Assembly (NCBI RefSeq): GCF_000143415.4 | Contig: NW_003314279.1 | Span: forward strand, 1,332,659 to 1,396,658 | Source of the DNA: Selaginella moellendorffii | Taxonomy: Eukaryota > Plantae > Lycopodiophyta | Direction: 5' to 3' | DNA length: 64,000 nt | Shown here: piece by piece, positions 14,801 to 62,010 of the stretch | How the letters are laid out: every line of letters begins with the position of its first letter | Numbering within the stretch: the stretch's first letter is position 1 | The notes under the pieces: generated by a model | Told to the model about the DNA's origin: nothing | Database searches by the model: none | The model's input: the letters and a program-made list of their open reading frames with translations, nothing else | Translations under genes and position numbers: made by a program

Positions 14801-17149
14801 TTGGCATGCAACATCCATAGTGTACAAAGTTAATAAATTGGCATGAAATACATTATGAATATTGAAGGAAAATCTAATTGATAGGATACATCACCAACCT
14901 ACTTTAACACCCAATAGAAACTAATATATTTTAGTAATAACTTTTGGGACAAAGATCCCTTAGCATTCAAGTTTTACGAGGATAACCAAATTTAGTTCCC
15001 ATATGATAGGTTACATCCCAATAATGTTAATTTTTATCATATTAATACCTACCATAAGCTTTACCTATCACCTTAGATACCTTGGCATAACTACTCTACA
15101 TAAGTTTCAATGGCTAAGACCAATATTTTGGACATTAATTTCAATATAACAATTTGTTAAGGAACCCCATGAATATTCCCTTGCAATATCTCTCATGGAA
15201 AACAACCAATAGTATTGTGAAATATATTGTTATAATAGATTCTATTGTGTCGAAATGCCCAACCTAATCGTATTGGTTCACCACAATATAGTACTATAAA
15301 TAATTCTCAAGCTAAGCATTTATATGTTTGGTTTACCCATCTATTTGAGGATGATAAACTGTATTGAATTTCAGCTTGGTACCAAATAACTAGAATAGTG
15401 TGCCCCAAAACTTTCCCTTAAATCTTAAATCTTTATTTGAGATAATCTCTTTGGGAAGATTATAAACCAATACTACTTCATGGAAAAAGAGTTTGGTTGT
15501 TTGCTTTGCATTCATTGTTTCCACAGTTGGAATGAAGTGCGTAATCTTTGACAATCGATTCATAACCACTATCAAAGTGTTATAACTTTTAGACTTTAGC
15601 AAGCAAGTGACAAAGTTGAATGTCACACTCTAAAATGACCATATTGGTGCTAGAATACATTACAACTTCCCAACCTACTTTTCAATTCTTCACTTATACT
15701 ACTGATAATTAGGGCAATAATGAATATAATCTGTTATATCATCTTCCATACTAGACTAAAAAAATCCCTTTTTCAATGAAGCAAGAGTCTTTTATTTATT
15801 GCCATGTCTTGTTGCTGGAACATTATAATGTCCCTCAGAAACAATAATTGCAAGATACAATCTTTCTTGCCTATAATATTTAAGCTTATCCTTAATTGAG
15901 AAGTAAAGTTTTGCATTGGTATGACTAACAACTTTCGCTGTATCACTATTAAGGTTCTACTTCAACAACTCTACATAGTGCAATATCACCTTTGCCAACA
16001 GATCACTTCCATATGAAGCTAGAACATCCTCTAACAAGTCTAAATTGATTGTTAATATTGCCCAAAACTAAGCCTAATGACTCAATAGATCCGGAATAAT
16101 ATTGTTTGTATCAGGTTTCTAGATGATTTCAATATCAAATCTAATGAGCTTCTTTTGTCAACGAACTTGCTTTTGCATAAGTATTGGTTGTATTGCAAAG
16201 TAGCTCAATGTGTTACTATCCCTATAAACCTTTGTATATCCATCCAAATAATGTCTTCAATGTTCCAATGCCAACACTACAATAAGCATTTTTTATCTCA
16301 TGTATAGGCCATCTTCATTGGGTTTCATCCAATTTCTTAAAGTAAAATGCAATGAGACAATCACTTTAGTGTAACACCACTTGCATTGTCACAATTTTGC
16401 TATAACATAGCACCTATAGCATAGTTAGATGCATCAAAATGCACTTCAAAGGGTTAATCAAGATCTAAGATCATGAGAATATGAACCATGGTCAAGATCT
16501 CCTTCAACTGTACAAAAGCACACTAACAAATTGGTGTCCAATAAAACATTATACTACCCTTCATTAACTTAATCAATAGAAAAACAAAATTGTAAAAATT
16601 GCAATAAAATTTTGATAATATCCTGCCAAATCAAGAAAAGAATGAACATTTGATATAGTGGTCAGGACTTCCCAAAACTTCACTTCTTCCAACTTTTTTA
16701 GATTCACCTCGATTACACCACTACTAATTATATGCCCGAAAAAATTCACATGCAATTGACTAAATACACATTTACTCTTCTTAGCATATAGTTTGTCTTT
16801 TTAATAACTTCTAAAATACTAACTCCAAGTGTTTTTTGTTCCAATGTTTCATTGAAGACTAGAATATCATCAATATAACAACAAATATATCTAAATAATT
16901 GTGAGACATAAATCCCTATGCCCCAAAGTAGAGCCGAAAGGGTGTTATATGGTAGTGGTTGAAGAAAAAATTCAACAAGCATAACACGCTTGGATCAAAA
17001 GCTCCGACTAAGAAAGTCAAGAGAGGGAGTGGAACTCCTAAAGAAGGGCTTAAGGAACAAGTACAAAACAATTAGTGAACAAGTCTCTAGAAAAGGACAC
17101 AAATATGGCAAGTGTTATGATATGAAGAAGTGTCAAGATTGACTTCAAG

Positions 17150-17465
17150 GAGGAGTTTGAGAAAAAGGCCGAGATGGAGTCTAAGATGGAGTTTGAGAAG
17201 GAGTTCAAGAAGGAGTATAAGAAAGAGGCCGAGATGGAGTTTAAGATAGAGTCTGAGAAGGAGTTCAAGGAGTCTGAGATGGAATTCAAGATGGAATCTA
17301 AGGAGTCTAAAATAGAATCTGAGATGGAGTCAAAGAGTCTAAAAATGAGTCTAAGATAGAGTCCAACATAGAATTCAAGAAGGAGTCTGAGATGGAATCC
17401 AAGATGGAGTCCGAAATGGGGACCGAGACTGGGACTGAGACTGCAACCGAGACCAAGTCTAAGTC
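17150..17465 (+). repeat. Degenerate short tandem repeats (GAGTCTGAGATG-like) inside the LTR
   Basis: Repeated gagtct/gagatg/aag units; an inverted homolog lies at about 22285-22440. Confidence 0.8.
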
Positions 17466-19382
17466 CGAGGGTGAAAGCCCAAAGTAATCGTCTCCTAGAC
17501 GTTGAGTGGTTTGGTGAGCTCCAAAAGGATAGTAAGAGGAAAACTCTAGTGGAACTAGTTTGGTGAAGAAAGGTCAGTGTGACTAAGGAAAGTGTAAGTA
17601 ACTAATTTTTCCATTCTACTTTAGTTACTTAACCACAACTTTGACCATATGGAGGAATTTCACTCACAACTTTGACCATATGGAGGAATTTCACTCTCAA
17701 CCTCCATAATTTTTATTCTAGATTTGGGGACTTGCTAGCCCCAAGAATGGCATTTATGCCATTCAACTTTTGCATTTGGTTCAAATGCTCCACATGTCTG
17801 ATCCTATAACCGACACCCAAAGGTACCACCAATATATTAATCTGTTATGCTAAGGCCATGCTCATTCAATTTTGTTACACTAGTGCTCCAACACCATTTG
17901 TATCATAGTCCCATCTTTTAAAAATTGGGCCATCTGTCAACGAGTGATCATCCTAGATCCACTCTTTAGCATCCTTAGAATGCCCACAAACATGGGGAGT
18001 AACATTCCCCAATATCCCTTTTCCAATCCCTACCAAATCCCTTTCTGTCCACGGCTGTATTCGTCAACATTGTCAGTAGGTCAAGACCCATATACTTAAC
18101 CACTATGTCTCAATAACTTCTAGGACTTCCTTGCTATATAACCACATCCTTGGTCACCACACAAGTGGATTGCTTTTCTTCCTTTCCATAGTTTGGGACT
18201 CTGGGATGACATTTCGAAACACCACAACCCTACGTGAGCCTTGTGGGTACTCTTCCCATCATCTGCTTTTGGGTACCCTAGTTAGGTGGCTAGAGCAAGG
18301 TTCTAATAAGCCATGCCAAGTATCTAAGTAAGTAGTGCCACTCACAATTGGATTGAGAGCATTGACTATTCGATCTCTTAGGGAGCTAGAGCCAGCTCTT
18401 GAACACTTCACTAAGCTACTTCACTTATCTATCCGTATTCACTTTAGTATTGGACTTTCCAGTGGTTATATTATCACCTAACATGTGGGTATAGCCTTCT
18501 TAGGCCACACTAGCCTTTTCTAACCAAATTGGCTCCCCCCCCACACTCTTTAGTATACTTTTGGAACCCCCTCCCCCTCCATATGCCATGTGTCATATGC
18601 CACGTGTCCAAAGGATAGTGGTGTGGAACCCGAGTTTTAAGCCCTTAGGCCATTGAATGAAGGAACAGAGCCAAACTCTTAGTATAGAGCCAAAGAGTAA
18701 TTGCATTGGAGCAGGGAATGACTCCCGAGTGTACAGCCTAAAAGGGACAGGAGCATGGAGCAATTTGGAACAATCCTAGAGTATCTAACATCTTAATGCT
18801 AGGATCAACACGCAAAAAGAAGTTAAATGGAGTCTAATGTTATTTCAGCATACCAGTAGCCTAAAGCGAGGACATGGGTACTCCACCAACTAGCATGGTA
18901 TGGAGCTTAAGCTTAAACCCAAGTTAGATGCAAAACAAGAACAAGCATGCAACCATGAGCTAGACTATACCTTAGGTTAGTTAGCCATGCCCAACTTACC
19001 CACTATCCCTACTATACATTTGAACTTCCCCACCACCCCCCCTTTTGAGGAACACACACTTTGGGCTTTCACCCCAAGCCTCCTTTAGTACTAGGAGTTA
19101 GTCTCTAGGATAAGCTCTAAACTTACTAAATATAAAATATCCTTAGATTGCGAATTTGGACATGGGACGAATACTATTGTGTTCATCTCCACATTCCGTA
19201 AATATGCCAAATAAATAAATCTAGACACTTTCCATAAATAGCATTTAGGACTGAAATGAGACTAAAATAAAGGGCATGATAGCAAGAGTGTTTAGCAGAC
19301 ACGGTAAACTATCATGTAGCAATATTAAGAGACTAGTCTCAATATATGAGGGTTTTTGTCAAGCTAGTGCAAGATAGAGTAT

Positions 19383-20056
19383 TGTAGCGCACCTTATCTC
19401 TCTCCCCTTAAGCCAACTGGAAAAGGGGCAATTGCTTGATGAGAGAGCCCTTAGTGGCTATTTTATCCCCATTTATCTCCCAAGGTTCCAAGGATCCACG
19501 GTGATAGTATATCCAAATCTCATCCCATGATCACATGCGCTACACTCACCCCCCCTTCAGAGATGTCAATGTCCTCATTGACTATTGACTAACAACCCCT
19601 ACTGAGCCAAGGGGAACCAGCACCTCCATTTCCGCACTCAATCTACCAATCCTTCCATTGTGTAGACCAGCTATTCCATGTGAGGCAACTAGTCATCCAC
19701 TCGTACCGCAGTCCCACGGTGGATACCTTCGTCCGTGGATACTCCACACAAGAGGAAGGACGTACGCATGGATGCCCAATACGTACGATTTCAAATTTAG
19801 GGGTAGGAATATACCTTGCTCAAGGGTATATTATATTTTTAAGTAGCCACTAATCAATGGGAATCGAACCCGTGCCATTTGCTCCGATACCAACTGTAAC
19901 GCACCTTATCTCTCTCCCCTTAAGCCAACTGGAAAAGGGGCAATTGCTTGATGAGAGAGCCCTTAGTGGCTATTTTATCCCCATTTATCTCCCAAGGTTC
20001 CAAGGATCCACGGTGACAGTATATCCAAATCTCATCCCATGATCACATGCGCTACA
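19383..20056 (-). mobile_element. TRIM (terminal-repeat retrotransposon in miniature), young copy
   Basis: 162 bp LTRs at 19383-19544 and 19895-20056 with 2 mismatches and TG...CA ends. tRNA-Met-type PBS TGGTATCGGAGC (19881-19892, minus), PPT AGGGGGGGTGAG next to the other LTR, non-coding 350 bp interior, perfect 5 bp TSD AGTAT. Confidence 0.93.
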
Positions 20057-22567
20057 AGTATAAAAAGCTAGGCAACATATACTTGGCTAAATAGACATTT
20101 AGGAATTCCGTCCTTATGCTTGTTTTGCCAAGTACAGATGCAAAGTCTAGTTTACTAACACTTGAACAAAAGGGGTTAATAAAGGATCCAGCAATATCAA
20201 CTTTTTGCTATCATAGCAATAAGGAAAGAATATCCAAAAGAACAGCCGATAGATAACTTTCGATACCCGAAGTCACATTTGCGGCAGTTTTGTTCCACTG
20301 TCCTTTAGACACGTGGCATGTGGCACATGGCATATGACACATGGTATATGGAGGGTTTAGGTTCCGCTTTGTGGTTATCCTATGGTAAATCACTATAGAA
20401 TGAAGGGTGAAAATCACATATGCTACAATCCCAAAGTTGTTCGCAAATTGGCCCCTTTCTATCCATCACATTGCTAACATGTTCACTTATGAAGTAAGAT
20501 GGAAAGTTATGCCCTTTTGTTATGCTACTTTTTGAGGATAGGCCCACTTTTGGGACTTTTCAATGCCAAGACAAGTGGTGATATACTTGACCACCAATAA
20601 AAGCTCCAATACCAAATTGTAAGTGACTAATTTTTTCATTCTACTTTAGTTATTTAACCACAACTTCAACTACATGGAGGAGTTTCACTCTCAATTTCCA
20701 TAAGTTCTATTTTGGATTTAGGGACTTGCTAGCCCCGAAAATGGCCTCTATGCCACTCAACCTTTATGCTTAGTCTACGTGCTCCATGTGTCCGATCCCA
20801 TGACTAACACCTAAAGGTACCATCGACATATCACCCCATTACACTAAGGCCATACCCATTCACCTTTGTTACACCAATGGTTTAACACCATCTGCATCAT
20901 AGTCTTATCTCTTAAAGATTAGGTCATCCGTCCATGAGTGATCATCCTAGATCCACTCCTTAGCATCCTTAGGATGCCTATAAATATGGGGAACAACCTT
21001 CCCCAATATCTTTTTTTCAATCTCCACCAAATCTTTTTCTATCCACAACTGTATTCACCAATATTGCCACTAAGTTAAAGCCTACAAGCTCAACCACTAT
21101 GTCCCAATGTCTTCTAGGACTTCCTTGCTATATAACTGCATCCTTGGTCACCATACAAGTGGACTACTCCTCTTCCTTTCCATAGTTTAGGACTTTGGGA
21201 TGATATTTTGAAACACTACGACTCTATACGAGTTTCATAGGTACTCTTCCCACAATTTACCTTTGGGTGCCTTAACCAGGTGGCTAGAGAAAAGTTTCGA
21301 TGAGTCACACTAGATATCCAAGTAGGTAGTGCTACCCACACTTGGATTGGGAGTATCGACCATTTAATCTCCCAAGGGAGCTAGAGCTAGCTCTTGAACA
21401 TTTCACTAAACTACTATCCGTATTCACTTTATCCTTGGATTCCTAATGGTTATATTATCACCCAACACGTGGGTATAGCCTTCCTGGGCCACACTGGCCT
21501 TTCCTAGACAAATTTCACTGAAGTCCAACCCCCACACTCTCCTTGCTATACTTTTGGAACCCCCTATAGCCCCTATAGTTGTCCACACTGGTGGTCCAAC
21601 ACCATCTACATCACAGTCCTGTCTCTCAAAGACTGGACCATCCGTCTATGAGTGATCATTTTAGATCCACTCCTTAATATCCTTAAAATGCTCACAAACA
21701 TAAAGAACAACCTTCCCCAATATCCTCTTTTTAGTCCCTATTAAGCCCCTTTCCATCCATGGCTACATTCGCCAATATTGCCACTGGGTCAAGACCCACA
21801 AGCCCAACCACTATGTCTCAATGACTTCTAGGAGTTCTTTGCTATATAACCACATCCTTGGTCACCACACAAGTGGATTGCTTTTCTTCTTTTCCACCAT
21901 CTACCTTTGGGTGCCTTAGTTAGGTGGCTAAAACAAAGTTTTGATAAACCACATTATGTATCTAAGTAGATAGTGCTACCCACATTTTGATTGGGAGCAT
22001 CAACCATTCAATCTCCCAAGGGAGTTAAAGCCTGTTCTTGAACACTTCACCAAGTTGCCCCATTTGTCTATCCGTATTCATTCTAGCTTTGAACTTCCTA
22101 GTGGTTAAATCATCATTCAACACGTGGGTATAACTTTTTTGGGCTATATTGACCTTTTCTGGCCAAACTAATTCCACTAGAGTCTAACCCTTACACTCTC
22201 CCTACCATACTTTTGGAACCCCATGTAGCCCCCTCCCCGAGGGACGATCACTTTGGGCTTTCACCCAATAACTTATATTAGTATTCGGACTCAGACTTGA
22301 ACTTGGACTTGGCCTCAAACTTAGTCTCGGTCTCAGACTTGAACTCAATCTCAGTCTCGGTCTTGGTACCATCTCAGACTCCATCTTGGACTCCATCTCA
22401 GGTCCATCTTGGACTCTATCTCAGACTCCATTTCGACACTTCCATGTGTCATATGTTGATCCTCTTGTGTCCCTTTTTTAGAAACTCACTTATTGCTTTA
22501 TGCTCATTCCTTGAGCACTTCATTGAAAGTTCCACTCCTGCTCTCAACTTTTCAAGTCGGAGGTTTT

Positions 22568-23267
22568 TGTAGTGCACCCTATCTCTTTCCCCTTAAGTCA
22601 ACTGGAAAAGGGGCAATTACTTGTTAAGAAAGCCCTTAGTGGCTATTTTATCCCCATTTATCCCTTAAGGTTCCAAGGATCCACGGTGACAGTATATTTT
22701 AATCTCATCCCATGATCACATATGCTACACTCACCCCCCCCCCCCCCTTGCCCTTTAGAGATGTCAATGTCTTCCATTTCCGCACTAAATTTACTAATCC
22801 TTCCATTGTGTAGACCAGCTATTCCATGTGAGGCAACTAGTCATCCACCCGTACCGCAGTCCTAAGGTGGATACCTTTGTCCGTGGATACTCCACACAAG
22901 AGGAAGGATGTACATATGGATGCTTAATACGCAGTCCCACGGTAGATACTTTTATCCGTGGATACTCCACACAAGAGGAAAGACGTACGCATGGATGCTT
23001 AATACGTACGATTTCAAATTTAGGGGTAGGAATATATTTTACTTAAGAGTATATTATATTTTTAAGTAGCCACTAATCAATGGGAATCGAACTCGTGCCA
23101 TTTGCTCAACACACCCTATCTCTCTTCCCTTAAGCTAACTGGAAAAAAGGGTAATTGCTTGATGAGAAAGCCCTTAGTGGCTATTTTATTCCCATTTATC
23201 CCCCAAGGTTCCAAGGATCCATGATGACAATATATCTAAACCTCATCCTATGATCACATGTGCTACA
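22568..23267 (-). mobile_element. TRIM, older second copy of the same family
   Basis: Homologous LTRs (22568-22728, about 23108-23267), PBS deleted, internal tandem duplication of about 75 bp, TSD GTTTT (22563-22567 and 23268-23272). Confidence 0.88.
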
Positions 23268-25954
23268 GTTTTAGTCCAAACGTGTTACTTTTGTTTGGCT
23301 TCCACTTTGTCCACTATTGTGTGGCACCTTTCGGCTTCACTTTTGGGGCTCTGGGATTTGTGTCTCATAAAAAGTTATACCTATTTGATAGGTGATGATA
23401 TAACCATTGAGAAGTCCAAAGCTAAAGTGAACATGGACAAATAAGTAGGGTAATTTAGTGAAGTGTTTAAGAGCTGACTTTAGCTCCCTTAGGAGATCGG
23501 ATGGTAAATACTCCTAATCCAAGTATGGGTGGCACTACTTACTTGGATATCTAGCATGGTTCATTGGAACATCATTCTAGCCACATGGCTAGGGCACCTT
23601 AAGACGGAAGGTGAGGAGTGTATTCACAAAGCTTGCATAAAGCCATAGTGTTTTGAAATGTCATCCCAAAGTTCTAGATTATGGAAAGGAAGAAGAACAA
23701 TCCTCTTATATAGTGACCAAGAATATGGTCATATGGTGTAGTGGTTGGGTCTTCAAGCCTTGATCCAATGGCAATGTTGGTAAATATGGTCATAGATGGA
23801 GAGGGATTTGGTATGGACTAAAGAAAGGATATTGGAAAAAGTTATTCCTCATGTCCTTAAGCATCCTAAAGATGCTAAAGTGTGGTCTTGGGAAGACTAT
23901 TTATAAATAGATGGCCTAATCTTTGAAAGATAGAATTATGGCACTAGACTACTAATGAAGCAAAGGTGAATAGACATAATCTTAGCATAATGGGTAAATA
24001 TATCAATAGTACCTTTTGTGTGTTTGTTGTGGGATTGGCTATATAGAACACTTGGACCAAGTGCAAAGCTAAAGTGGCATAGAAGCCATTCATGAGGCTG
24101 GCAAGTCCCTAAATTAGGAATAGAATTTAAGTAAGACTCCTCCAAGTGGTAAAAAATGTGGTAAAGTAAAATAGAAAACTTAGTTGTTTACAATAATCTC
24201 TACATATTCTATCCATCATTGTATTGAACATAGCCAAAGTATTACATAAACCAAATGGCATAATAAAGAATTCATAGAATTTGTAATAAGTATTATATAT
24301 TGTCTTCTCTACATCTTAATCTACATCCATATCTAATGATGCCCAGATTGTAAATTAAATTGTGTAAATTACTTAACCTTTCTTTATGCAAAGATGCCCA
24401 AGTCACAAGCTACAATATAATGGCAAGGCTAAAGCACCATAGGAGCTATTTTCTGGTTGGCATTCCATTGTAAAATCTCAAATGAGCACTTAGGCACTGG
24501 ACAAGAAATGGCTCTAGTCAACAGCTTGCTTGTGCATAAAAGTACTCAGGATTTGATAATGGGAGGATTTTAGGTAAAGTTGGATGGGACATGGATTTGG
24601 AGGAAGATACCCAAACCTTTGTAATCTAGCAGCCCCTATTCCATCCATTTCCACTTTGAGGAACTTTTCATTGTGGTATAATTTACTAAATGCAAACTAA
24701 AATCAAAACCCTCTTCTTATGTGATTCACTCCAGCCTTATATGGGAAGATCATATGGCAACTCCTCTTATTAAGATGCTAATCCTTAATTCTAGAATTTT
24801 TCCTCTCACCCTTTGTGGTCATTTGATGGCTCCTAGAAAGCTTTGGATTTCCCTTAGCTTCCTGACTGTCTAGTTTTTAATGTGGTTGTTGTTAATGATG
24901 GTGTTGTAGCACCTCTTATAGGTCCATTGAAGGTTAACTGAAATCCTATTGCCATCTCCTCTTTATCTCACTTTTCCTCATTGATTTCTACCTAAGTGCA
25001 CTACTTGGATTTCCTCGTCTTCTAGCCTTCCAAGAGTTGAGCTCCCTTCTGGCATTTAGGAGGATACTCCTTTCCAAAAATCTTGGTCTATAGACCTCTT
25101 TATCTATCACTGAACTTAGCCTTATTGGCTTATGTCACTACTGATATTCTGCCATGTGGCCAGGTGTGTGGTGAGTCCCTCCAAAAACACTGAAGCACAA
25201 GGTAAACAGAAATTCCAGGCAGAGATCCAGGATTTTAAGTGCTTTATTTAATGATGATTTATTTCATATAATACCAATTTGAGGGGTGACAATTGGGCGA
25301 CTCCCTCCACGTGGGAGGTTAGAATTCTGTGACCTACATTGCTGTCACTTGGATTGCCAAATATCAATTGCTAGGTGAAATTGTAAGTTCATATTTTTAG
25401 TTTCTCATAAGTATTGGAGGAAATTGCCTTCAAACTCGGTCTACAAACTCTGAAACTTAAGCAGAATCAATATGATGAAGTTATTGCAATCTTTTTTTGA
25501 CGTGCCATTAGGAATTAGGAAGAAGAGCGGATGGTCTTGGTCTCCCTCCATTTGGGAGGTTAATGGGAGGATGTTCGATGTACTTTCAAATGTATCTGAA
25601 ACAAAGAACTGGTGTTTGAAGACCAGCTGCAAAACCAGGGGGAGGGGGGGAAGTAGTTCAGTTGGTGTCCAAAGAGATCTTTTGCTTGCATGGAATCCCT
25701 CAATAACCTCACTGTGAGAGTTAGTAACAGGAAATTTCTGGAAAAAAGAGTTGCAATTCTCTTGAACGAAAAAAAATGTCCCTCTCCTTTCTTCAAAGTG
25801 GCAGCCTTCTTCTTGGCAAAGACCGCTCTTCTTTCACATGATTATGCCTGTAATCACACGTGGGCGAAACTGAACATTTGTTTCTCTAATTTTTGTCCTA
25901 CTATCCAGGCTTTACACTTGCATGCAACAATGCAGGTTTTCTTTGGATGAAGCT

Positions 25955-27805
25955 TCAAGATTCAAAGTACCTGTTTGTGAGCCAAGTCGAATCGCTTCTT
26001 ACAGCCTCTCCGTCCTGGTTACGGTGCCAATAGTAGAACGCATGCGTCCTGTTTTTGATCTCGAGCATTGCGTGACCAAAACTCGCCTCGCGATATGCCG
26101 AGTAGTTTGGCTGCGGTTGCGTGAAGCTGGGAAAATGTCCGTATAAATCTCACAGGGCCGGAAAGAGAAAACTAAGAAAAAACCACCTACTTTCCAGCGA
26201 GCCCTTCTATGTTTCCTCCATCGCCGACTGTTATGTAGACAGGCGCAGACTCGTTGCGGGATGGAGAGCATTGGCCGTTGACAACGTTGTACTCGATATT
26301 AGAGACGCGGTGCTGTGGTCACAAAAGCATTAAGAAGAGAAAGCAAGAAAAGAGAGAACAAAACTTACACTCCGTTCGTATGCATGAACGTGCCCGGCAA
26401 ACACAATGTCGACTCTGTATTGCACGAACCATGCTTCGAATTGCACACGCATCGTTTCGCCCTCCATGTAGTGATGGGTGTTACTGTTGTACCACGGGGA
26501 ATGCATCAAAACAATCACCCACGGGGTTTTCTTCCTGTTTATATTCTGGAGGTCATTCTGCAGCCATGCCCACTGCGGGGTATATTTCCCTGCACGACCG
26601 TTGCTTATAAGAAACATTAGTTCAGCAAACCATTCGCAAACCATATGCGGAGTATGAAGACAGCACGATGATGTGCGCTGACGCCCTGTTGATCGAATAC
26701 CAGAGCTGCGATGTACTCTTTGATGAACGATGGGGTGTTTGATAGCGATGAAGATACGGCTTGAATGGTATCACCTCGCTCTGGAAGAAGTTAGCACCGC
26801 CGGAAACTTGTAAGCTATATAACCTGGTAGAGTCTAGAATGCGCACTAGCTTACGATTGCTGGACGGTAGTCTAGCTCGTGGTTTCCCGCCGTCCAGATC
26901 CAAGGTTGATACGCGGTGCTCGGCTCCACCAATCGACCCCAAGTGTCCCAACGATTATTGTCGTCCAAGGGATAATGATCGGCGTATGAGAGGTCTCCGA
27001 CGTAAAGAAGAGTCTGTCCGCTGCTGTTTAAGTAGTGCTGAAAGGTGTTGAGGGAGTCATACGTCTGTCCGAGATCTCCTGCAACAGAAGCAGTTGTCGG
27101 TTTCGAACGGATATAATAGACACAAACCTATGACGCCAAATGTGTACGCAACGTCGGGGCCAGATTTCGGTGGAGTGACGAACCAGAATTCTCGAGCGCA
27201 TTCTCCATCGCCGAGCCTGTAGTAATACTTCGTAGCATACTTTGGACAAGGAAGCAAGAACCAAAAACAAGGACACAACAGTGAGTCGGCCAGAAAACTG
27301 TAGATCATATCAAACACACCTCGAGATTAGTGAGCTTCACATGGTGGATGTAGCCAGATGTGTAGTTCGCGTACTTATACCTTGTGATGTTTCCAGTCGC
27401 CGTCCTTGAGTACTTTGCGGTCTCGTTTCCAAAACTTACAGCCAACGATCCAGGTTGCGACGGAGTAACCCAGGAAACGATCGTGGAATCCGCAGTAACA
27501 CTCCCTTGCGTTATGTGGACCTGGAACACAAAGTCCTAATCAAACCGAGGAGTTATCGCAAAGAAAACCTGTTCTGGCGCATTTCCACAGCCTGCTAGAT
27601 TAGGAGGTCGCAGAAATTCGCTGCCGACGGGCAAATCCTCCGAGGCTTGGAGCCTCCGCCGGTAAGAGCTTGTGATTCCCGAAGAGCCGCATTGGAGCTG
27701 GAGCTGGAGGATGATCGTGAGAAGCGGCAGCGGCAGCCCTGCAAAGCATGGCTCAAGAATCGCTGGCTGCAATGCCGCACTGATCGGCGCTAGAGAATGT
27801 GCCAT
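25955..27805 (-). CDS. PAP: Purple acid phosphatase (PAP10/12/26-like), about 8 exons
   Basis: All metal-binding blocks are present: GDLG, GDLSYAD, GNHE, VLMH, GHVH. Also NAPEQ|VHITQG and C-terminal [28 protein letters not shown]. Start may be 27805 or 27832. Confidence 0.95.
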
Positions 27806-29507: not shown

Positions 29508-31500
29508 TTATGCTCTGACAATCACAATGGGTGTCTGCTCATCCGAATTCCCTGCAAACGTTTCAATTAGTCAGTGAACGAAGAGCAACCATCTTTCAGC
29601 TCACCAGCAGGATTGTTGATCAAAGCTTGCGATAAGGTGTCGTGGTCCACACCGTCGGATGCCTACACACGATGAGGTTGGATCGGTCTCCAAAACAAAG
29701 CCAAGCATCCATTTACATACGGCTAGTATTTGGACTTTCTTCAAATCGTTCACGTCCACGACAGCCACTTCACATCCTGCGAAGGTAAGCTAGACAATGC
29801 TAGACAATCCATCTCACACGATTACCTGTTTTAGCTTTGAGAGCATCCACGGTGGCTTTAGTGTGAACCTTCAGGAAAACTGGGTCAAAGAAGAAATCTT
29901 GAGAAAAAAATATCTTGCAAAAACTGTACCGGCCCAAGTGTTATGAATTGATCGTAAGGTGGGAGAGTTCCGGTAACATCATCGATCAGCCTAGCCTGCA
30001 AAATAAAATCTGAAGTAACATGCATGAAAATCACAGAGTCGTACCTGTGCCCCGGCTAGTCGGTAGAACATGCCTCGCTGCCCAAATAGTCTACGAATGT
30101 TCTGCAACGCGTAATATCGTCAAGAATGATTCGATTTTTTCTTACCTTGCAATAACTGCAATGACGACCGCAAAGACAATCCTGAGCTTCCCAGATATGT
30201 CAATCAAAGCCTGTGATTATCCGAAATAAGCGTAATGTACTGGGAAAGGAAAGCTTATGTACCTGCATACCACATGCGGTAGCGAGGGACGATGTTGGAT
30301 GGAAGAGACGACACACCAGCTTTGCAAGAAGGCCAGGTTGCAAGCTTGTAGGATGACGGTAACGCCCTGAAAGGATGTCAGCTCGCTATTTTCCATACAG
30401 TTACCTTGCATTATGGCAAGTGGCGTCTCTCCTATGGCGATGACATCGCCCGGCTTGACGTATGGAAGCGCGTATCTTTTCTTTTGCAGCGTACATGATC
30501 AGAAAAAATAAAAAATAAAAAACTAACCATGTCAAAGGTATCTCACCTTTTAAGAACCTCCAGAGGATCATCTAGATGGCACAGAAGATGTGTGCAGATC
30601 GGCTGTATCTTCAACGCCTCCCTAAAAGCAAAAGTAGATTAGAAAACTGTGATGAGACTCGGAACTTGCTTACGAAGCCTTGGAAGGCGAATCGGGGTAG
30701 TGCGTTGGAAGAACGACGTGTTGAGAATGATTTGTCCGTCCATGAGGACCATAACAAACATACTCCATCTCGACGCAAAGAGCCTGCATATTGTTTCATC
30801 AGCTTACAACAATGAACGTCAAAGGTACGTGCCTGCAAATCCGAGAGGAGCAAAGGACTATGCGATTCGACATCGACCACCACCTATTTATTCATGAACA
30901 GATTCAGTACCTGAGAGAAAAAGCTACACACACACCTCTATCGACGTGCTTTCTCCAGCTCTAGTTATGTAAGCAGGCCAGTAGCAATCGTTCCTCGGCT
31001 CTGGCTTGTTTCCTGGATGTCTAGAAAGAATCTGCGATGAAAAGCTACAGAATAGAGAAGTTGAGATTTATCAAAACAATACGAACCTTGAGCTTCGTTT
31101 TGATCGACTCGACTGAGCCTTCCGAGAGGAGCTGGAGCTTCCCTTGGGTCTCGGCAATGAACAGCTCGTGGCGTCTCGTCATGTTAGAAAACCTTCGAGG
31201 AAATAAACCAAAACAATACAAACCAAGAGAGAAAAATGCTAGCCATTCACCTCATAATCCCTCGAAACTGATAGTGGCAAGCCTCGTGACGATCCCAAGA
31301 CCATGATCCACGGCTAAGAACAAGACCATTGCCAGGAAGATTTCTCTGCGAGAGAAATCACAAGACAATACGTGTGACAGATCGATCCATACCTGCATTG
31401 AGAGAAGACGGGGGAGCTCCTGCGAGAGCCACTGCGCATTGCGCCCTCCGTACGTGCACTCCGCCGCGGCGGGCGCTCCCGCCAATCCCAGAGACGCCAT
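29508..31500 (-). CDS. F420-0:gamma-glutamyl ligase-like (CofE / F420_ligase fold) protein of cyanobacterial type, 16 exons
   Basis: Manually spliced in frame: ...[50 protein letters not shown]...[16 protein letters not shown]...[32 protein letters not shown]...[15 protein letters not shown]...[18 protein letters not shown]. Confidence 0.85.
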
Positions 31501-31681
31501 GGCGGGCTTTTAGGTAGAGCCCTAAACTCTGAGGAGCTCCAAGAACAATGCTGTTGTCTCAAGCATTTCCCTCGAATCCTCTCTGCCAGGAGCTATTCCT
31601 GCCAAGAACCAAGCACAAGGTGAGAGATCGATGAAATATCTTGCCTGAATCGAGATTTCTCTGGATTTCCAGCGATCGTCG

Positions 31682-32071
31682 ATGATCATCCAAGCCGGGG
31701 GATGGACGGGCAAATCATCCGGCGAGCCCGGCAAGAATCGCAAATCCTGGAAGCGCGCAACGGAGAAGTACATGAGGCCCTTCTCGATCGATGTCTACAT
31801 CTCCGCGCGCTACGTGAACGCCAAGATCGTCCACCGCGTGACGAGCAAGACGGTGGCCGTGGCGACGACCAACGCCAAGGATCTGAGAGCTTCGCTGCCA
31901 TCGCTCACCAGCGCCAGCGCCTGCGAGGTGATCGGCAAGCTCATCGCGGAGAGGGCAATGGAGGCGGATGTGTACGCTGTGACGTATGTGCCCAGGAAGA
32001 ATGAGAGGCTGCAAGAGAAGCTTGAGATCGTGCTCAACACTGTCAAGGAGAATGGCGTCGCTGTGCTCTGA
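31682..32071 (+). CDS. Organellar ribosomal protein uL18 family protein
   Basis: 129 aa: IDVYISARYVNAKIVHRVTSKTVAVATT...ACEVIGKLIAERAMEADV, the L18p signature. Confidence 0.85.
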   Translation: MIIQAGGWTGKSSGEPGKNRKSWKRATEKYMRPFSIDVYISARYVNAKIVHRVTSKTVAVATTNAKDLRASLPSLTSASACEVIGKLIAERAMEADVYAVTYVPRKNERLQEKLEIVLNTVKENGVAVL

Positions 32072-34431: not shown

Positions 34432-36927
34432 TCAATCCCACTTTCCAGTTATCCATTCGTTCCACGAGTAAATATCCCAGCCTTCGGTTTTCGCCGTGTT
34501 GTTTGCCATGGCCGAGAAGGTGCGACAGTCGGGTTGGACACCCCTCTCGACAAACCTCTGGAAAAGCTCACGAGCTTCGTCAAGTCTCCCGGCAAGTCCA
34601 AACCCGTTGACAAGAACGTTGCACGTGAAGTTATTGGGAGCACATCCAGCAGCTCTCATGTCCACCTCGAAAACTTTGCGGGCCTCGTCCAGCCTGCCGA
34701 GAGAGCACAGCCCCGAGATCAAAGCCGTGTACATCACCACGTCCGGCGTGCCGCCTTTGTCAACGAGCATGCAGAGAACTTGTCTGGCTTGATCGACTCT
34801 GTGTGCTCTGCAAAGCCCGTCCATGAAGGTGCTGTAAGTAACCACGTCCGGCTTTGCCTGTCTCTTCACCACCTCCTCGAAAACTTCTCGGGCTTGAGAG
34901 AGCCTCTTGGCCTTGCAAAGCCCGTTGATGAGGATATTGCAGCTAACATCGTTGGGAGTGCAGCCTCTGTTGGTCATGAGCTCGAAAATCCTCCAGGCCT
35001 CGTCCACGCCTCCGTACTTGCAAAACCCGTCCATGAGGCAGCTGCAAATAACGACCGAGGGGCTGCCTCCGCTTTCAAGGTAGCTGAAGAAGATCTCTTT
35101 TGCTCGAGCAACCCGGTTCGCCTTGCACAGGCCATCAATAAGAACTGTGAACGTAACCTCCTGAGGTCGGACGCCATCTTTCTCCATCCTGTTGAAGAAA
35201 AGCTCGGCCTCGTGAATTTTCCCCTTCTTGAAAAGAGTGTCGATGATGCAGTTGTAAGGAGCACTCGTCACCACACCACCTCGTGCCACGAGCTCGTTCA
35301 GCAGCTCCACAGCTTCAGGAACTCGGTCTGCTTTGCAGAAGCCGTCGACCAAAATGTTGTAAGTGATGAAACTGGCTCCAGCACCAGAGGAAAGAAGACG
35401 CTCGTAGAACTGCTGAGCTTCTCCGAGCCTTTCCACTCGACACAAGCCTCCAATCAGTGTGTTATAGGTGGAAGTAGAAGGAGCACAGCCCGGTGCCTTC
35501 ATTTCTCCGAAGAGCTGGATGGCCTCGTCTATGCGTTTCGTCTTGCAAAACGCGTTGATCAAGATGTTATAGCTGACGGTATTGACAAGGCCACGAAAAT
35601 CCTTAAGCTCTTGGAACCACGATTCGGCCTTGTCGATCATGTCTGACTTGCAAAGGCTGTCGATCGTAATGTTGACAAGGTGGCGCTCCCGCAGCTGCTG
35701 CCTGTCAAGCATCAGCTTCACCACCTTTAAGCACTCCTCAGCTCGTCCCGCTTTGGACAGCTCGCGGACGAGCAAATCTGCCGGTAAGCCGCAACCATCT
35801 GAAACCAGACTGTGGAAAAGCTCCAGTGCTTCGTCCAACTTCCCAACGTGGCAGAGACACAATACGATATCGGCGTTCATTGCTGCTGTAGGAACACCAC
35901 CGATGTCAACGTATGTTTCCAAAAGTTCCAGCGCTTCCCTGAACCTGTGACCCCAGACGAGCCCTTGAAACAACATTGCCAAGGCCGAACCGATGCTCCG
36001 AACTTGCCCGTTATCAACAGCTTCCTGGTAGAAATCAAACGCTTCATTGAGTCTGTTCTGCTCAAGAAAAACTTCGATGATAATGTTGTAAGTGCTGGAG
36101 CTTGGAGTCATGCCTTCCCTCCCGAAAAAGTCCATAGCTTCCTGTATCCTGTCCGATGCAGCCAGTCCCCGAACTACTGTGTTGAAAGAAACCATGTCTG
36201 GACCATGCAGCTTGTTCGCCACTTTCAAAACTTTCATCGCATCATCCACCTTGTTGGCCTTGCACATCTTGTTGATGACGAGACGAGATGCTTCTCTGTC
36301 AAAAGTGCACCCTGTATCGATCATAAGACTGAGCTGCTCAAGCGCTTTCACTAGCCGGAAAATAGTGAGAAGGCACTTGACGATAGAAATTCCCATATCC
36401 TGCTTCCCGGAACATAGCAGATGATTAAGCAGCCAATAGCCTTTGTGAAACTTGCCTGCCTTGCAAATGTTTTCCGTGATAGTCGTAAAGGATGTTACTG
36501 CTGGCTTGTCTAGCTGCATAGACATTCTTTTCAGCATTGCAGACGCTTCACCTCTGAGGACCCTGAAAGCCGTTGACGCATCGCCTTCCCAAACGGCAAT
36601 GCGGAGCTCGAAACCATTTTGCAAGCTTGCAAAGCAGTGCGGTTCACTTTTTCGGCCATAGCCTTCTTCCAGAAGCATCCTTAGATCTGGAAGACACCAA
36701 AACCTCTCATCCTCAAGACATTGTGGCTGCCGAAGAGCAGCCCACGAGAAGAAATCCAAAGCTAGCTCTTTTGTATTGAGAAAACTCGTTACCTTGGCAA
36801 ACGACTCACCCACAATCCCTGAATTATGCCCTTCACGTGTATCCGATAGCGCCCCGGCACCGGCATTGCAGCTATGCATACATCTCCATTGCCTGTGAAA
36901 GACGCCGCACTGTCGTCTCACAAACAT
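34432..36927 (-). CDS. P-class pentatricopeptide repeat protein
   Basis: 831 aa intronless ORF with 35-aa repeats (VSYNILINAFCK, TYNTLIGGLCR, VTFTVLIDGLCK), LALDFFSWA N-terminal motif and an Arg-rich targeting-like N-terminus. Confidence 0.93.
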   Translation of the reverse strand: MFVRRQCGVFHRQWRCMHSCNAGAGALSDTREGHNSGIVGESFAKVTSFLNTKELALDFFSWAALRQPQCLEDERFWCLPDLRMLLEEGYGRKSEPHCFASLQNGFELRIAVWEGDASTAFRVLRGEASAMLKRMSMQLDKPAVTSFTTITENICKAGKFHKGYWLLNHLLCSGKQDMGISIVKCLLTIFRLVKALEQLSLMIDTGCTFDREASRLVINKMCKANKVDDAMKVLKVANKLHGPDMVSFNTVVRGLAASDRIQEAMDFFGREGMTPSSSTYNIIIEVFLEQNRLNEAFDFYQEAVDNGQVRSIGSALAMLFQGLVWGHRFREALELLETYVDIGGVPTAAMNADIVLCLCHVGKLDEALELFHSLVSDGCGLPADLLVRELSKAGRAEECLKVVKLMLDRQQLRERHLVNITIDSLCKSDMIDKAESWFQELKDFRGLVNTVSYNILINAFCKTKRIDEAIQLFGEMKAPGCAPSTSTYNTLIGGLCRVERLGEAQQFYERLLSSGAGASFITYNILVDGFCKADRVPEAVELLNELVARGGVVTSAPYNCIIDTLFKKGKIHEAELFFNRMEKDGVRPQEVTFTVLIDGLCKANRVARAKEIFFSYLESGGSPSVVICSCLMDGFCKYGGVDEAWRIFELMTNRGCTPNDVSCNILINGLCKAKRLSQAREVFEEVVKRQAKPDVVTYSTFMDGLCRAHRVDQARQVLCMLVDKGGTPDVVMYTALISGLCSLGRLDEARKVFEVDMRAAGCAPNNFTCNVLVNGFGLAGRLDEARELFQRFVERGVQPDCRTFSAMANNTAKTEGWDIYSWNEWITGKWD

Positions 36928-61728: not shown

Positions 61729-62010
61729 CTAGATGATCAAACCAAGCTCCCCGTCCTTTAACAGGAACTTGGAGTCACGCTTACAGCAGACCTTGTTCTT
61801 ACACTTGTATCGCGGCTGCGTGATCTTCTTGTTGTTAAAATTGTTGAAACTGGAGGGCTCGCCACAAGTCTTGCAGGGCGGTTTGATCGATTTTGCTAGC
61901 TCAAGATCATCGCTGGTGGGAAGGCCTTCGTGGGCGGGCTGGAACACTGCATGGTTATCTTTCCCAGGGGACCGCCCCCTCTTCTTCTTCACAGCCGGAG
62001 CGATCGCTGC
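61729..62010 (-). pseudogene. 5'-truncated paralog of the Dof-like zinc-finger gene
   Basis: KKKRGRSPG...PPCKTCGEPSSFNNFNNKKITQPRYKCKNKVC...LLKDGELGLII*; aligns to 57892-58190. Confidence 0.75.

What the first reader, a model, noticed from the sequence alone, without database searches (positions are those of the whole stretch)
29508..31500. Hidden 16-exon gene for a cyanobacterial-type F420:gamma-glutamyl ligase (CofE-like) protein in a land plant
Seen: 16 small exons splice in frame with no stops into a protein of roughly 400 aa (one intron needs a GC donor, CAG|GCACGT near 30830). The ORF track misses it. Knowledge: the C-terminal half ([66 protein letters not shown]) matches my recollection of cyanobacterial proteins annotated as F420-0:gamma-glutamyl ligase. 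The N-terminal half (PGN..., [15 protein letters not shown]) resembles their extra domain. Plants are not known to make F420. CofE-fold enzymes ligate glutamate to cofactors, and a chlamydial homolog acts as an alternative folate glutamyl ligase. Inference: this is an endosymbiont-derived or horizontally acquired, fully intronised enzyme for an undescribed cofactor or metabolite glutamylation, possibly lost in seed plants. The 36-aa first exon is not an obvious transit peptide.
Basis: partly seen in the sequence, partly recalled or inferred. Interest (0 to 1): 0.85.

Follow-up and report, generated by a model that had tools for sequence, protein, structure and literature searches.

The report
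Orphan CofE-fold gene in Selaginella
The 16-exon gene is real and expressed, and it encodes a cyanobacterial-type protein with the fold of the F420 glutamate ligase CofE but without CofE's F420-binding parts; the family is kept from green algae to conifers, has not been found in flowering plants, and its function is unknown.

Summary
Observation confirmed. On the minus strand, 31500..29508, 16 exons join in frame to a 397-aa protein. All 15 introns (38-71 nt), including one GC-AG intron, appear as joints in contigs of four runs from four studies.

The window is Selaginella moellendorffii. RefSeq already annotates the locus (LOC112346945), but as a 308-aa protein that uses an acceptor 11 nt upstream and is cut short by the frameshift.

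The 397-aa form aligns end to end with Marchantia and Sphagnum (64-69% identity) and with cyanobacterial proteins (about 50%). It keeps all 41 family-invariant residues.

An AlphaFold model of the Marchantia ortholog shows an N-terminal beta-sandwich and a C-terminal CofE-fold domain (2PHN, Z 13.0, 180 residues, 18% identity).

The family is not a true CofE:
- It has no NCBIfam hit, and its Pfam F420_ligase scores are below cutoff.
- CofE's invariant K/S/K residues are replaced.
- The two elements that contact the F420 ring are absent.

The family occurs in more than 556 cyanobacterial species genomes, prasinophyte-grade green algae, streptophyte algae, bryophytes, lycophytes, ferns and a conifer. 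No angiosperm was found.

Cyanobacterial members carry a membrane anchor and sit directly upstream of a tandem-GNAT acetyltransferase gene.

The most likely function is a metal- and nucleotide-dependent amide ligase for an unknown, non-F420 substrate. This is inferred, not shown.

The parts
29508..31500 (-). Whole coding region of the 16-exon gene (S. moellendorffii LOC112346945), 397 aa
   Evidence: Splice model; joints; end-to-end homology; identity to XP_024532736.1 for residues 1-294.
31393..31500 (-). Exon 1 (36 aa). Only 14 residues precede the conserved CTYGGRN..LSQEL helix region. There is no hydrophobic anchor and no long presequence.
   Evidence: In-frame TAA 12 nt upstream. Contigs run unspliced from 31393 to 31619.
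30674..31345 (-). Exons 2-6 (31345-31251, 31192-31087, 31031-30936, 30883-30833, 30783-30674). They encode the N-terminal beta-sandwich domain, with invariant N71, W121 and the YGPHGR motif.
   Evidence: AF2 model of the ortholog (strands 73-232). VIA-align Z about 9 to GAE/adaptin-ear and ApaG-type sandwiches. Invariant residues.
30784..30832 (-). Intron 5, the GC-AG intron (49 nt)
   Evidence: Joint 30781|30831 with 7-nt ambiguity in all four runs; only the GC..AG placement is a usable splice-site pair.
29508..30621 (-). Exons 7-16 (30621-30547, 30475-30405, 30366-30263, 30210-30146, 30090-30045, 29995-29930, 29868-29826, 29776-29721, 29662-29605, 29551-29508). They encode the C-terminal CofE-fold domain, about residues 191-397.
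   Evidence: CofE 2PHN Z 13.0, rmsd 3.4, 180 aligned residues, for ortholog residues 226-434. Foldseek E 9e-6. PF01996 below cutoff in 29 of 54 members. hhalign E 0.006 against 0.16 for the reversed control.
30263..30366 (-). Exon 9, holding the family-specific insert with the invariant [12 protein letters not shown] motif (C256, C269). It has no counterpart in CofE.
   Evidence: This exon alone retrieved 43 cluster representatives from 1.84 billion proteins.
30091..30101 (-). 11 nt included when the alternative acceptor (AG at 30103-30102) is used. The result is a frameshift, the tail [15 protein letters not shown] and the 308-aa RefSeq protein.
   Evidence: Loose ends at 30103 and 30092 in run X4; the conserved joint 30090|30146 in X1-X3; tail of P0161/P0002.
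31501..31619 (.). Shared 5' region. It holds the 5' UTR of this gene and exon 1 (5' UTR) of the divergent L18p-family gene. Contigs join the two.
   Evidence: Contigs of X2, X3 and X4 run 31393-31619 and then continue with sequence from 31673 onward. This implies a plus-strand GT..AG intron at 31620-31672.

Best explanation
This is an expressed, intact Selaginella moellendorffii nuclear gene for a 397-aa two-domain protein of cyanobacterial ancestry. It has an N-terminal beta-sandwich and a C-terminal domain with the CofE (F420:glutamate ligase) fold. It belongs to a separate, uncharacterised sister family of CofE. That family occurs in a wide range of cyanobacteria and has been inherited vertically through the green lineage, but it is missing from angiosperms. 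Most likely mechanism (inferred): the CofE-fold domain uses divalent metal and a nucleoside triphosphate to activate a carboxylate and join it to an amine. The substrate is not F420-0, because the elements that hold the deazaflavin in CofE are missing and a family-specific insert ([12 protein letters not shown], with two invariant Cys) is present. In cyanobacteria the enzyme is tethered to the membrane by an N-terminal anchor with its bulk on the cytoplasmic side. It is encoded directly upstream of a tandem-GNAT acetyltransferase, so the two probably act on one small amine- or carboxylate-bearing metabolite or membrane-linked precursor. Eukaryotic members lost the anchor, and most gained a presequence-like extension that suggests plastid import. 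The Selaginella protein has almost none. Shown: gene structure, expression, homology, fold, phyletic range, synteny. Inferred: ligase chemistry, partnership with the GNAT, location.
For: Gene and expression. Identity of locus and species. Intactness: all 41 invariant and 54 of 56 near-invariant family residues are kept. Full-length homology: 64-69% to bryophytes, about 50% to cyanobacteria. Fold: AF2 pLDDT 84, pTM 0.84; CofE is the top hit in Foldseek (E 9e-6) and in VIA-align (Z 13.0, 180 aa, rmsd 3.4; next unrelated rows about 9, and those match the other domain). Sequence link to CofE: PF01996 in 29 of 54 members at E<=0.01, best 7e-7; hhalign E 0.006-0.015 against 0.16 for the reversed control. 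Kept positions in that alignment: the GD..GR motif, D116(CofE)=D350 and D158(CofE)=D391 in Marchantia numbering. Not F420: the segment equal to Af-CofE G153-C155 falls in a gap, and the C-terminal tail with R234 is absent. Af numbering was mapped, and the role of these residues is from PMC10861534. No F420 is known in eukaryotes (PMC8498797). Range: more than 556 GTDB species genomes, with the best 80 cyanobacterial wherever the organism is named; eukaryotic range. Tree: land plants 97*, streptophytes follow the species tree, filamentous cyanobacteria 99*. Anchor: 101 of 101 cyanobacterial members against 0 of 17 eukaryotic ones, with net charge +1.8 after it. Synteny: the partner lies directly downstream in at least 70 of 83 loci, picocyanobacteria-type contigs included. 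The partner is a tandem GNAT (2WPX Z 20.0, MshD Z 17.7).
Against: No biochemical data exist for any member in the literature searched. CofE's invariant K47, S50 and K51 align to T, A and I, and E53 aligns to Q, so nucleotide use may differ or be lost. The profile-profile score is weak (probability 3-6%), and residue pairings beyond the first 107 columns come from a relaxed alignment. No residue-level structural superposition was available, so conservation of the metal ligands is not established. Gene adjacency to the GNAT may be only a conserved gene order: ruvX, DUF3727 and yceG follow in the same string and are functionally unrelated. Whether plants keep the GNAT partner could not be tested. 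The fold model is of the Marchantia ortholog, not the Selaginella protein, because no reference exists for a spliced sequence.
Confidence: 0.6

Rival explanations
1. It is a genuine F420-0:gamma-glutamyl ligase, as the database labels say, and plants and cyanobacteria make glutamylated F420.
For: NCBI and UniRef names. CofE fold. Weak PF01996 hits. Cyanobacteria and some algae make the FO chromophore for photolyases (PMC8498797).
Against: No hit to the cofE equivalogs TIGR01916, NF009809 or NF009810, whereas true CofE scores 239-306 bits. PF01996 scores are mostly below the 25-bit cutoff. The Af-CofE G153-C155 segment and R234, which contact the F420 ring (PMC10861534), are missing. There is no evidence of F420 in eukaryotes. 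The extra beta-sandwich, the membrane anchor and the insert are foreign to CofE.
Confidence: 0.03
2. It is an alternative folate (dihydrofolate or folylpolyglutamate) glutamyl ligase, like the chlamydial CofE homolog CT611/FolC2.
For: CT611 of the same superfamily complements E. coli folC (PMC1971073). This shows that CofE-fold enzymes can switch cofactor.
Against: No hit to TIGR04132 (folate-type gamma-glutamate ligase), which true CofE proteins do hit weakly. From my own knowledge, cyanobacteria and plants already have FolC/FPGS. Loss in angiosperms would be odd for a folate enzyme. The membrane anchor and tandem-GNAT partner do not fit.
Confidence: 0.05
3. The CofE scaffold has been re-used for something other than amide ligation: a different enzyme chemistry, or a non-catalytic binding or assembly role at the membrane.
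For: CofE's invariant K47/S50/K51/E53 are replaced. About 30 residues of the CofE core between ITDT and the last strand are missing. Two new invariant cysteines lie in a new insert. The added beta-sandwich resembles protein- or ligand-binding modules.
Against: 41 invariant positions, rich in Asp, Glu, Asn and Gln (D224, E230, Q237, D314, D315, D324, D353, N355 in the Selaginella numbering), look like an active site. The GD..GR motif and two Asp aligned to invariant CofE Asp are kept.
Confidence: 0.27
4. Artefact: a pseudogene, a contaminant bacterial sequence, or an over-fitted splice model.
For: RefSeq's protein is truncated, and one run shows the frameshifting acceptor.
Against: 15 spliceosomal introns seen as joints in four studies. 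Plant genes on both sides (L18p, PPR). A second S. moellendorffii RefSeq locus (LOC112343386), probably the other haplotype, is 97% identical over 296 aa. All invariant residues are kept. Placement among land plants in the tree.
Confidence: 0.01

Closest known systems
CofE / FbiB N-terminal domain (coenzyme F420-0:L-glutamate ligase; Pfam PF01996, TIGR01916; structures 2PHN, 2G9I, 7ULD)
   Same: Same fold for the C-terminal 200 residues or so (Z 13.0, rmsd 3.4, 180 aa, 18% identity). Shared GD..(x)n..GR motif and two aligned Asp. Weak but repeated PF01996 hits.
   Different: Extra N-terminal beta-sandwich, plus a membrane anchor in cyanobacteria. CofE's K47/S50/K51 are not kept. The FGRPWRxG segment (Af G153-C155) and the C-terminal tail with R234, both F420 ring contacts, are absent. 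About 30 residues of the CofE core between ITDT and the last strand are missing. A new insert, [12 protein letters not shown], is present. No hit to the cofE equivalog models.
Chlamydial FolC2 (CT611) and TIGR04132 'putative folate metabolism gamma-glutamate ligase'
   Same: A CofE-superfamily member in organisms that lack the rest of the F420 pathway, so a precedent for a changed substrate (PMC1971073).
   Different: No TIGR04132 hit. Different architecture. Different genomic context: tandem GNAT, ruvX and cruF/cruG rather than folate genes.
Ligase plus tandem-GNAT pairs in small-molecule synthesis, such as mycothiol MshC/MshD
   Same: The conserved downstream partner has the tandem-GNAT fold of MshD (2C27, Z 17.7) and of the clavulanate-pathway tandem GNAT (2WPX, Z 20.0). 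Pairing an amide-forming ligase with an N-acetyltransferase has this precedent (my own knowledge).
   Different: The ligase fold is unrelated to MshC. No shared substrate is known. The functional coupling here is inferred from gene order only.

Membership tests
CofE (coenzyme F420-0:L-glutamate ligase, TIGR01916 / NF009809 / NF009810) | Scores above the curated cutoff of the equivalog models | tested here: not met
   Five full-length members gave no NCBIfam hit at E<=0.1. Control CofE proteins scored 239-306 bits against a cutoff of 180.65.
Pfam PF01996 F420_ligase | Score at or above the gathering threshold (25 bits) | tested here: not met
   The members whose scores were listed reach 12.6-18.7 bits. 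29 of 54 match at E<=0.01, best 7e-7. A few cyanobacterial members carry a precomputed PF01996 hit. The window's own exons give nothing.
CofE-like fold (structural superfamily) | Three-dimensional similarity to solved CofE across the domain | tested here: met
   Model of ortholog P0007, residues 226-434, against 2PHN_B residues 2-222: Z 13.0, rmsd 3.4, 180 aligned. Also 7ULD Z 12.5 and 2G9I Z 11.8. Foldseek top hit E 9e-6. Tested on the Marchantia ortholog (64% identical), not on the Selaginella protein.
CofE | Elements that bind the F420 deazaflavin ring (Af-CofE G153-C155, and R234 of the partner subunit; PMC10861534) | tested here: not met
   Af numbering was mapped onto the CofE alignment. 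The FGRPWRx segment lies opposite a 7-column gap. The family ends 1-10 residues after the ..V(L)IR strand, so the tail with the invariant Arg is missing.
CofE | Invariant QK-x-x-SK-x-EGR motif (K47, S50, K51, E53 in the 20 CofE sequences of alignment A2) | tested here: not met
   It aligns to [11 protein letters not shown]: K47->T, S50->A, K51->I, E53->Q. D40, G54 and R55 are kept.
CofE | Acidic residues of the two-metal site, and GTP dependence | tested here: inconclusive
   The invariant CofE residues D116 and D158 align to D350 and D391 of the ortholog, but the alignment there is low-confidence. The identity of CofE's metal ligands could not be read, because Nocek 2007 is not held.
CofE | Co-occurrence with the rest of the F420 pathway (CofC/CofD, FO synthase) | not testable with these tools
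   No whole-genome presence/absence tool was available. The literature reports no F420 in eukaryotes and says cyanobacteria use FO in photolyases (PMC8498797).
Folate-type CofE homologs (TIGR04132, chlamydial FolC2) | Match to the family model; folate gene neighbourhood | tested here: not met
   No TIGR04132 hit. No folate-pathway gene appears among the called neighbours of six cyanobacterial loci. The 88-locus scan used only markers for the partner, CruF/CruG, RuvX, DUF3727 and YceG.

The most novel reading that the evidence does not exclude
The family is a missing tailoring enzyme of the cyanobacterial and plastid peptidoglycan pathway. It would be a membrane-face ligase that joins a free carboxylate of the stem peptide (on UDP-MurNAc-peptide or lipid II) to an amine, and the neighbouring tandem GNAT would prepare or cap that amine. 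From my own knowledge, the precedent is the N-acetylputrescine amide on D-isoglutamate in Cyanophora cyanelle murein. This would explain the cytoplasm-facing membrane anchor in cyanobacteria. It would also explain the ligase-acetyltransferase pairing and a phyletic range that resembles that of plastid peptidoglycan. That range covers prasinophyte-grade algae, streptophyte algae, bryophytes, lycophytes, ferns and gymnosperms. No member was seen in angiosperms, nor among the named hits from core chlorophytes other than Tetraselmis. It would supply the 'unique modification' of streptophyte peptidoglycan postulated in PMC9434261. Nothing here tests it directly. Other traits lost in angiosperms share much of this range, and some eudicots are reported to keep all the critical Mur-pathway genes, although a PBP has not been confirmed (PMC9434261).
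Probability: 0.07. Interest if true: 0.85.

Novelty: new variant of a known kind. Interest (0 to 1): 0.55.

Why it matters
This is a strongly conserved gene (41 invariant residues) of unknown function. It is found in a wide range of cyanobacteria and has been kept for over a billion years in green algae and non-flowering land plants. It is mislabelled in databases as an F420 enzyme and is truncated in the Selaginella RefSeq annotation.

The family is distinct from CofE: the fold is the same, but the deazaflavin-binding parts are missing and there is a new insert, a beta-sandwich and a membrane anchor. It also has a conserved tandem-GNAT operon partner. Together these define a concrete two-gene problem that can be tested in Synechocystis or Synechococcus and in Marchantia.

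Loss in angiosperms puts it with the small set of plastid-related functions that flowering plants gave up. It also explains why it escaped Arabidopsis-centred catalogues.

Practical outcomes: a corrected gene model for LOC112346945, and a caution against propagating the 'F420-0:gamma-glutamyl ligase' label.

Tried and rejected
- Exon-by-exon Pfam scan: nothing useful, the exons are too short.
- The spliced protein has no reference, so I did not send it to any search tool. I reached the family by running exon 9 alone through the search of protein representatives. After that I worked with orthologs that have ids, and compared my model with them only inside scripts.
- Profile of the family against PDB sequences: no CofE hit even at E<=10. 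Single members P0111 and P0092: none.
- NCBIfam: no hit.
- hhalign in global mode failed.
- Nocek et al. 2007, which gives CofE's metal ligands, is not held, and other papers did not list the ligands.
- The search for plant homologs of the GNAT partner was swamped by cyanobacterial hits. The protein atlas showed only bacterial clusters. Earlier findings had nothing on it.
- Literature searches found no paper on this family in plants or cyanobacteria.
- A link to myxoxanthophyll genes (cruF/cruG lie divergently upstream in about half of the loci) was considered and set aside, because plants keep the family without those genes.
- A link to mltG/yceG was also set aside. From my own knowledge, ruvX-DUF1292-mltG is an old gene string also found in Firmicutes.
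- The remaining unnamed cluster representatives added no new named lineages.
Full report
**1. The observation**

The gene lies on the minus strand. I read the strand directly and built the splice model independently.

- There are 16 exons: 31500-31393, 31345-31251, 31192-31087, 31031-30936, 30883-30833, 30783-30674, 30621-30547, 30475-30405, 30366-30263, 30210-30146, 30090-30045, 29995-29930, 29868-29826, 29776-29721, 29662-29605 and 29551-29508.
- Together they give 1194 nt and 397 codons, with no internal stop, and end in TAA.
- The introns are 38-71 nt long, and none has a length divisible by three.
- Fourteen introns are GT-AG. Intron 5 (30832..30784) is GC-AG.
- A TAA lies in frame 12 nt upstream of the ATG.
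- The mechanical ORF list shows only fragments of 82-90 aa here, so the gene is indeed invisible to an ORF track.

**2. Expression**

Twenty public runs from ten studies hold parts of the stretch, with word shares of 0.2-0.41. That is what spliced transcripts of a gene with such short exons would give.

I laid the contigs of four runs from four studies on the region.

- All 15 predicted joints are seen. Fourteen appear as joints in at least three runs.
- Joint 31031|31087 appears as a joint in X4 and as matching loose ends in X1-X3.
- The joint over intron 5 has a 7-nt repeat at both sides. Among the eight possible placements, only GC..AG is a usable splice-site pair.
- The tool only guesses that these runs are RNA. 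The intron-less form itself is the evidence for transcripts.
- Run X4 also shows a second acceptor 11 nt upstream of exon 11 (AG at 30103-30102), which shifts the frame.

**3. Identity of the locus**

I therefore searched with exon 9 alone against 1.84 billion representatives, which gave 43 hits. All comparisons with my model were then made in scripts.

- P0161 (XP_024532736.1, 'uncharacterized protein LOC112346945', Selaginella moellendorffii, 308 aa) is identical to my model for residues 1-294. It then continues [15 protein letters not shown], which is exactly the product of the upstream acceptor.
- P0002 comes from a second RefSeq locus (LOC112343386), probably the other haplotype. It is 97% identical over 296 aa.
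- So the window is S. moellendorffii, and the gene is annotated but truncated. The last 100 residues, which hold half of the conserved domain, are missing from the RefSeq protein.
- The 397-aa form is the conserved one. It aligns over residues 12-396 with Marchantia P0007 (64%, E 1e-171). It is 69% identical to Sphagnum P0048 and about 50% identical to cyanobacterial proteins of 385-400 aa.
- It keeps all 41 invariant and 54 of 56 near-invariant positions of a 54-sequence family alignment.

**4. Phyletic range**

A Marchantia query found more than 3000 proteins. Named eukaryotic members are:

- Liverworts: Marchantia, Riccia, Calypogeia.
- Mosses: Ceratodon, Sphagnum.
- Lycophytes: Diphasiastrum and Selaginella.
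- Ferns: Adiantum, Ceratopteris, Psilotum.
- A conifer: Cryptomeria japonica.
- Streptophyte algae: Mesotaenium, Closterium, Klebsormidium, Chlorokybus, Mesostigma.
- Early-branching chlorophytes: Chloropicon, Pycnococcus, Pseudoscourfieldia, Pyramimonas, Tetraselmis.

With the conifer protein as query, the nearest hits are four unnamed transcript clusters at 72-74%, then bryophytes at 63%. No angiosperm stands above the cyanobacterial level. The family is therefore present in at least one gymnosperm and, by strong inference, lost in angiosperms.

Wherever the organism is named, the best 80 are cyanobacteria. Picocyanobacteria-type marine contigs also carry the gene.

In a maximum-likelihood tree:

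- Streptophytes follow the species tree. Land plants have support 97*, and Zygnematophyceae are next to them.
- The Selaginella model sits among land plants.
- Filamentous cyanobacteria form one group (99*).
- All eukaryotes lie on one side of a branch, but with weak support (67).

This fits one ancient acquisition of a cyanobacterial-type gene followed by vertical descent. Endosymbiotic gene transfer is the simplest reading. The root and the donor lineage are not determined.

**5. Structure and relation to CofE**

The AlphaFold model of the Marchantia ortholog, built with the family alignment, has pLDDT 84 and pTM 0.84. It shows an all-beta domain (residues 73-232) and an alpha/beta domain (about 226-434).

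- CofE of Archaeoglobus fulgidus is the best match to the C-terminal domain. Foldseek gives E 9e-6. VIA-align gives Z 13.0, rmsd 3.4 and 180 aligned residues at 18% identity, covering model 226-434 and chain 2-222.
- The N-terminal domain matches generic beta-sandwiches (GAE/adaptin ear, ApaG) at Z about 9.

At sequence level the link is faint.

- PF01996 scores of the members that were listed are 12.6-18.7 bits, below the 25-bit cutoff. It is matched by 29 of 54 members at E<=0.01, best 7e-7.
- The NCBIfam cofE equivalogs and the folate-type TIGR04132 give nothing.
- A family profile finds no CofE among PDB sequences.

To compare residues, I fetched true CofE genes from metagenome contigs with a motif pattern. 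I confirmed them with TIGR01916, where they score 239-306 bits, aligned twenty of them (A2) and ran hhalign. This gave E 0.006-0.015 over 107 columns, and 180 columns with a relaxed threshold, against 0.16 for the reversed control.

Kept:
- The GD...GR motif.
- Two Asp aligned to invariant CofE Asp residues (CofE D116 and D158 in A2 numbering).

Not kept:
- CofE's invariant K47, S50, K51 and E53, which align to T, A, I and Q.
- The FGRPWRx segment.
- About 30 residues of the CofE core between ITDT and the last strand.
- The C-terminal tail.

Mapping A2 onto Af-CofE numbering shows that G161-P163 equals Af G153-C155 and that R243 equals Af R234. According to the liganded CofE structures, these elements sandwich the F420 ring (PMC10861534). 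The family instead has its own insert with the invariant [12 protein letters not shown] motif.

Conclusion: the family has the CofE fold and is probably homologous, but it is not a CofE and cannot bind F420 in the CofE manner. This agrees with the statement that no eukaryote is known to make F420 (PMC8498797).

**6. Context in cyanobacteria**

- All 101 cyanobacterial members tested start with a hydrophobic 19-residue window (Kyte-Doolittle >=1.6). It is followed by net positive charge (+1.8 over 12 residues).
- None of 17 eukaryotic members has such a window, and neither does the Selaginella model.
- By the positive-inside rule, the bulk of the cyanobacterial protein faces the cytoplasm, tethered to a membrane.
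- Most plant members have a 30-100 residue N-terminal extension instead. The Selaginella protein has only 14 residues before the conserved region, so its location is open.

In 88 cyanobacterial loci, the gene directly downstream on the same strand is one conserved family in at least 70 of the 83 loci with enough flank. It is followed by ruvX, a DUF3727/DUF1292 gene and yceG. In about half of the loci, cruF and cruG lie divergently upstream.

The downstream partner is a tandem GNAT: AF2 pLDDT 75, 2WPX Z 20.0, mycothiol synthase MshD Z 17.7. Whether plants keep this partner could not be tested.

**7. Mechanism**

What is shown: an intact, expressed, vertically inherited gene with a CofE-fold domain, a membrane anchor in the bacterial members, and conserved adjacency to an acetyltransferase.

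What is inferred: the domain still performs CofE-type chemistry, which is metal- and NTP-dependent activation of a carboxylate followed by attack of an amine. It would act on a different, possibly membrane-associated or small-molecule substrate, together with the GNAT.

I put the gene, family and fold statements at about 0.95 and the ligase mechanism at about 0.4.

The main rival (0.27) is that the scaffold has been turned to another use, because the K/S/K motif is gone. True F420 ligase (0.03) and folate ligase (0.05) are unlikely. An artefact is excluded.

A speculative but testable reading is a peptidoglycan stem-peptide tailoring enzyme. Its basis is a phyletic range that resembles that of plastid peptidoglycan (PMC9434261), the membrane-face location and the ligase-acetyltransferase pair. 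I give it 0.07.

**8. Novelty**

Literature searches found no study of this family. Databases carry it as 'hypothetical' or as an automatic 'F420-0:gamma-glutamyl ligase'.

The gene is not new to annotation, and the superfamily is known. What is new here:
- The corrected gene model.
- The demonstration that the family is a distinct architectural variant lacking the F420-binding elements.
- The anchor-to-presequence switch between cyanobacterial and eukaryotic members.
- The conserved tandem-GNAT partner.
- The range: kept in a gymnosperm, lost in angiosperms.

**Limits**

- The fold was predicted for the Marchantia ortholog, not for the Selaginella protein.
- Residue correspondences with CofE beyond the first 107 columns rest on a relaxed profile alignment.
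- The absences in angiosperms, red algae, glaucophytes and most core chlorophytes are absences from ranked hit lists, not from whole-genome screens.

Noticed in passing
window 31501-32071 (+): A divergent neighbour gene of the Ribosomal_L18p family (ORF 31682-32071, PF00861 E 1e-8). It has a 53-nt GT-AG intron in its 5' UTR (31620-31672). Contigs join its first exon to exon 1 of the CofE-like gene, so the two 5' ends appear to overlap head to head within about 120 nt.
   Followed up: partly
window 30091-30103 (-): RefSeq XP_024532736.1 and XP_024522509.1 (308 aa) use an acceptor 11 nt upstream of the conserved one. This frameshifts and removes the last 100 conserved residues. One of four runs shows both forms. 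It is likely a minor or unproductive isoform chosen as the reference model.
   Followed up: yes
window 29508-31500 (-), all 15 introns: None of the 15 very short introns (38-71 nt) has a length divisible by three, so retention of any single intron would shift the frame.
   Followed up: no
window 34432-36927 (-): An intron-less 831-aa pentatricopeptide-repeat gene (PPR_2 E 6e-121).
   Followed up: partly
window 26330-26644 (-): An exon-sized ORF with a calcineurin-like metallophosphoesterase match (PF00149, E 1e-10) whose sequence looks like a purple acid phosphatase. It is probably part of a multi-exon gene upstream of the region studied.
   Followed up: no
window 12001-26000 and 60001-62000: Blocks of low G+C (0.28-0.44, against about 0.50-0.56 elsewhere in the window). 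The cause was not examined; repeats or transposons are possible.
   Followed up: no
L001-L008, L128-L207 (cyanobacterial loci): A conserved gene string: CofE-like, tandem GNAT, ruvX, DUF3727/DUF1292, yceG. cruF-cruG (myxoxanthophyll genes) lie divergently upstream in about half of the loci. In the picocyanobacteria-type contigs the partner has lost its recognisable GNAT motifs (no Pfam hit).
   Followed up: partly
P0045 (Riccia sorocarpa, 488 aa), P0034 and P0353 (Closterium, 857 and 569 aa): Some annotated eukaryotic family members are longer or carry foreign domains, such as the UBP zinc finger PF17807 in P0045. These are probably merged gene models rather than real fusions.
   Followed up: no
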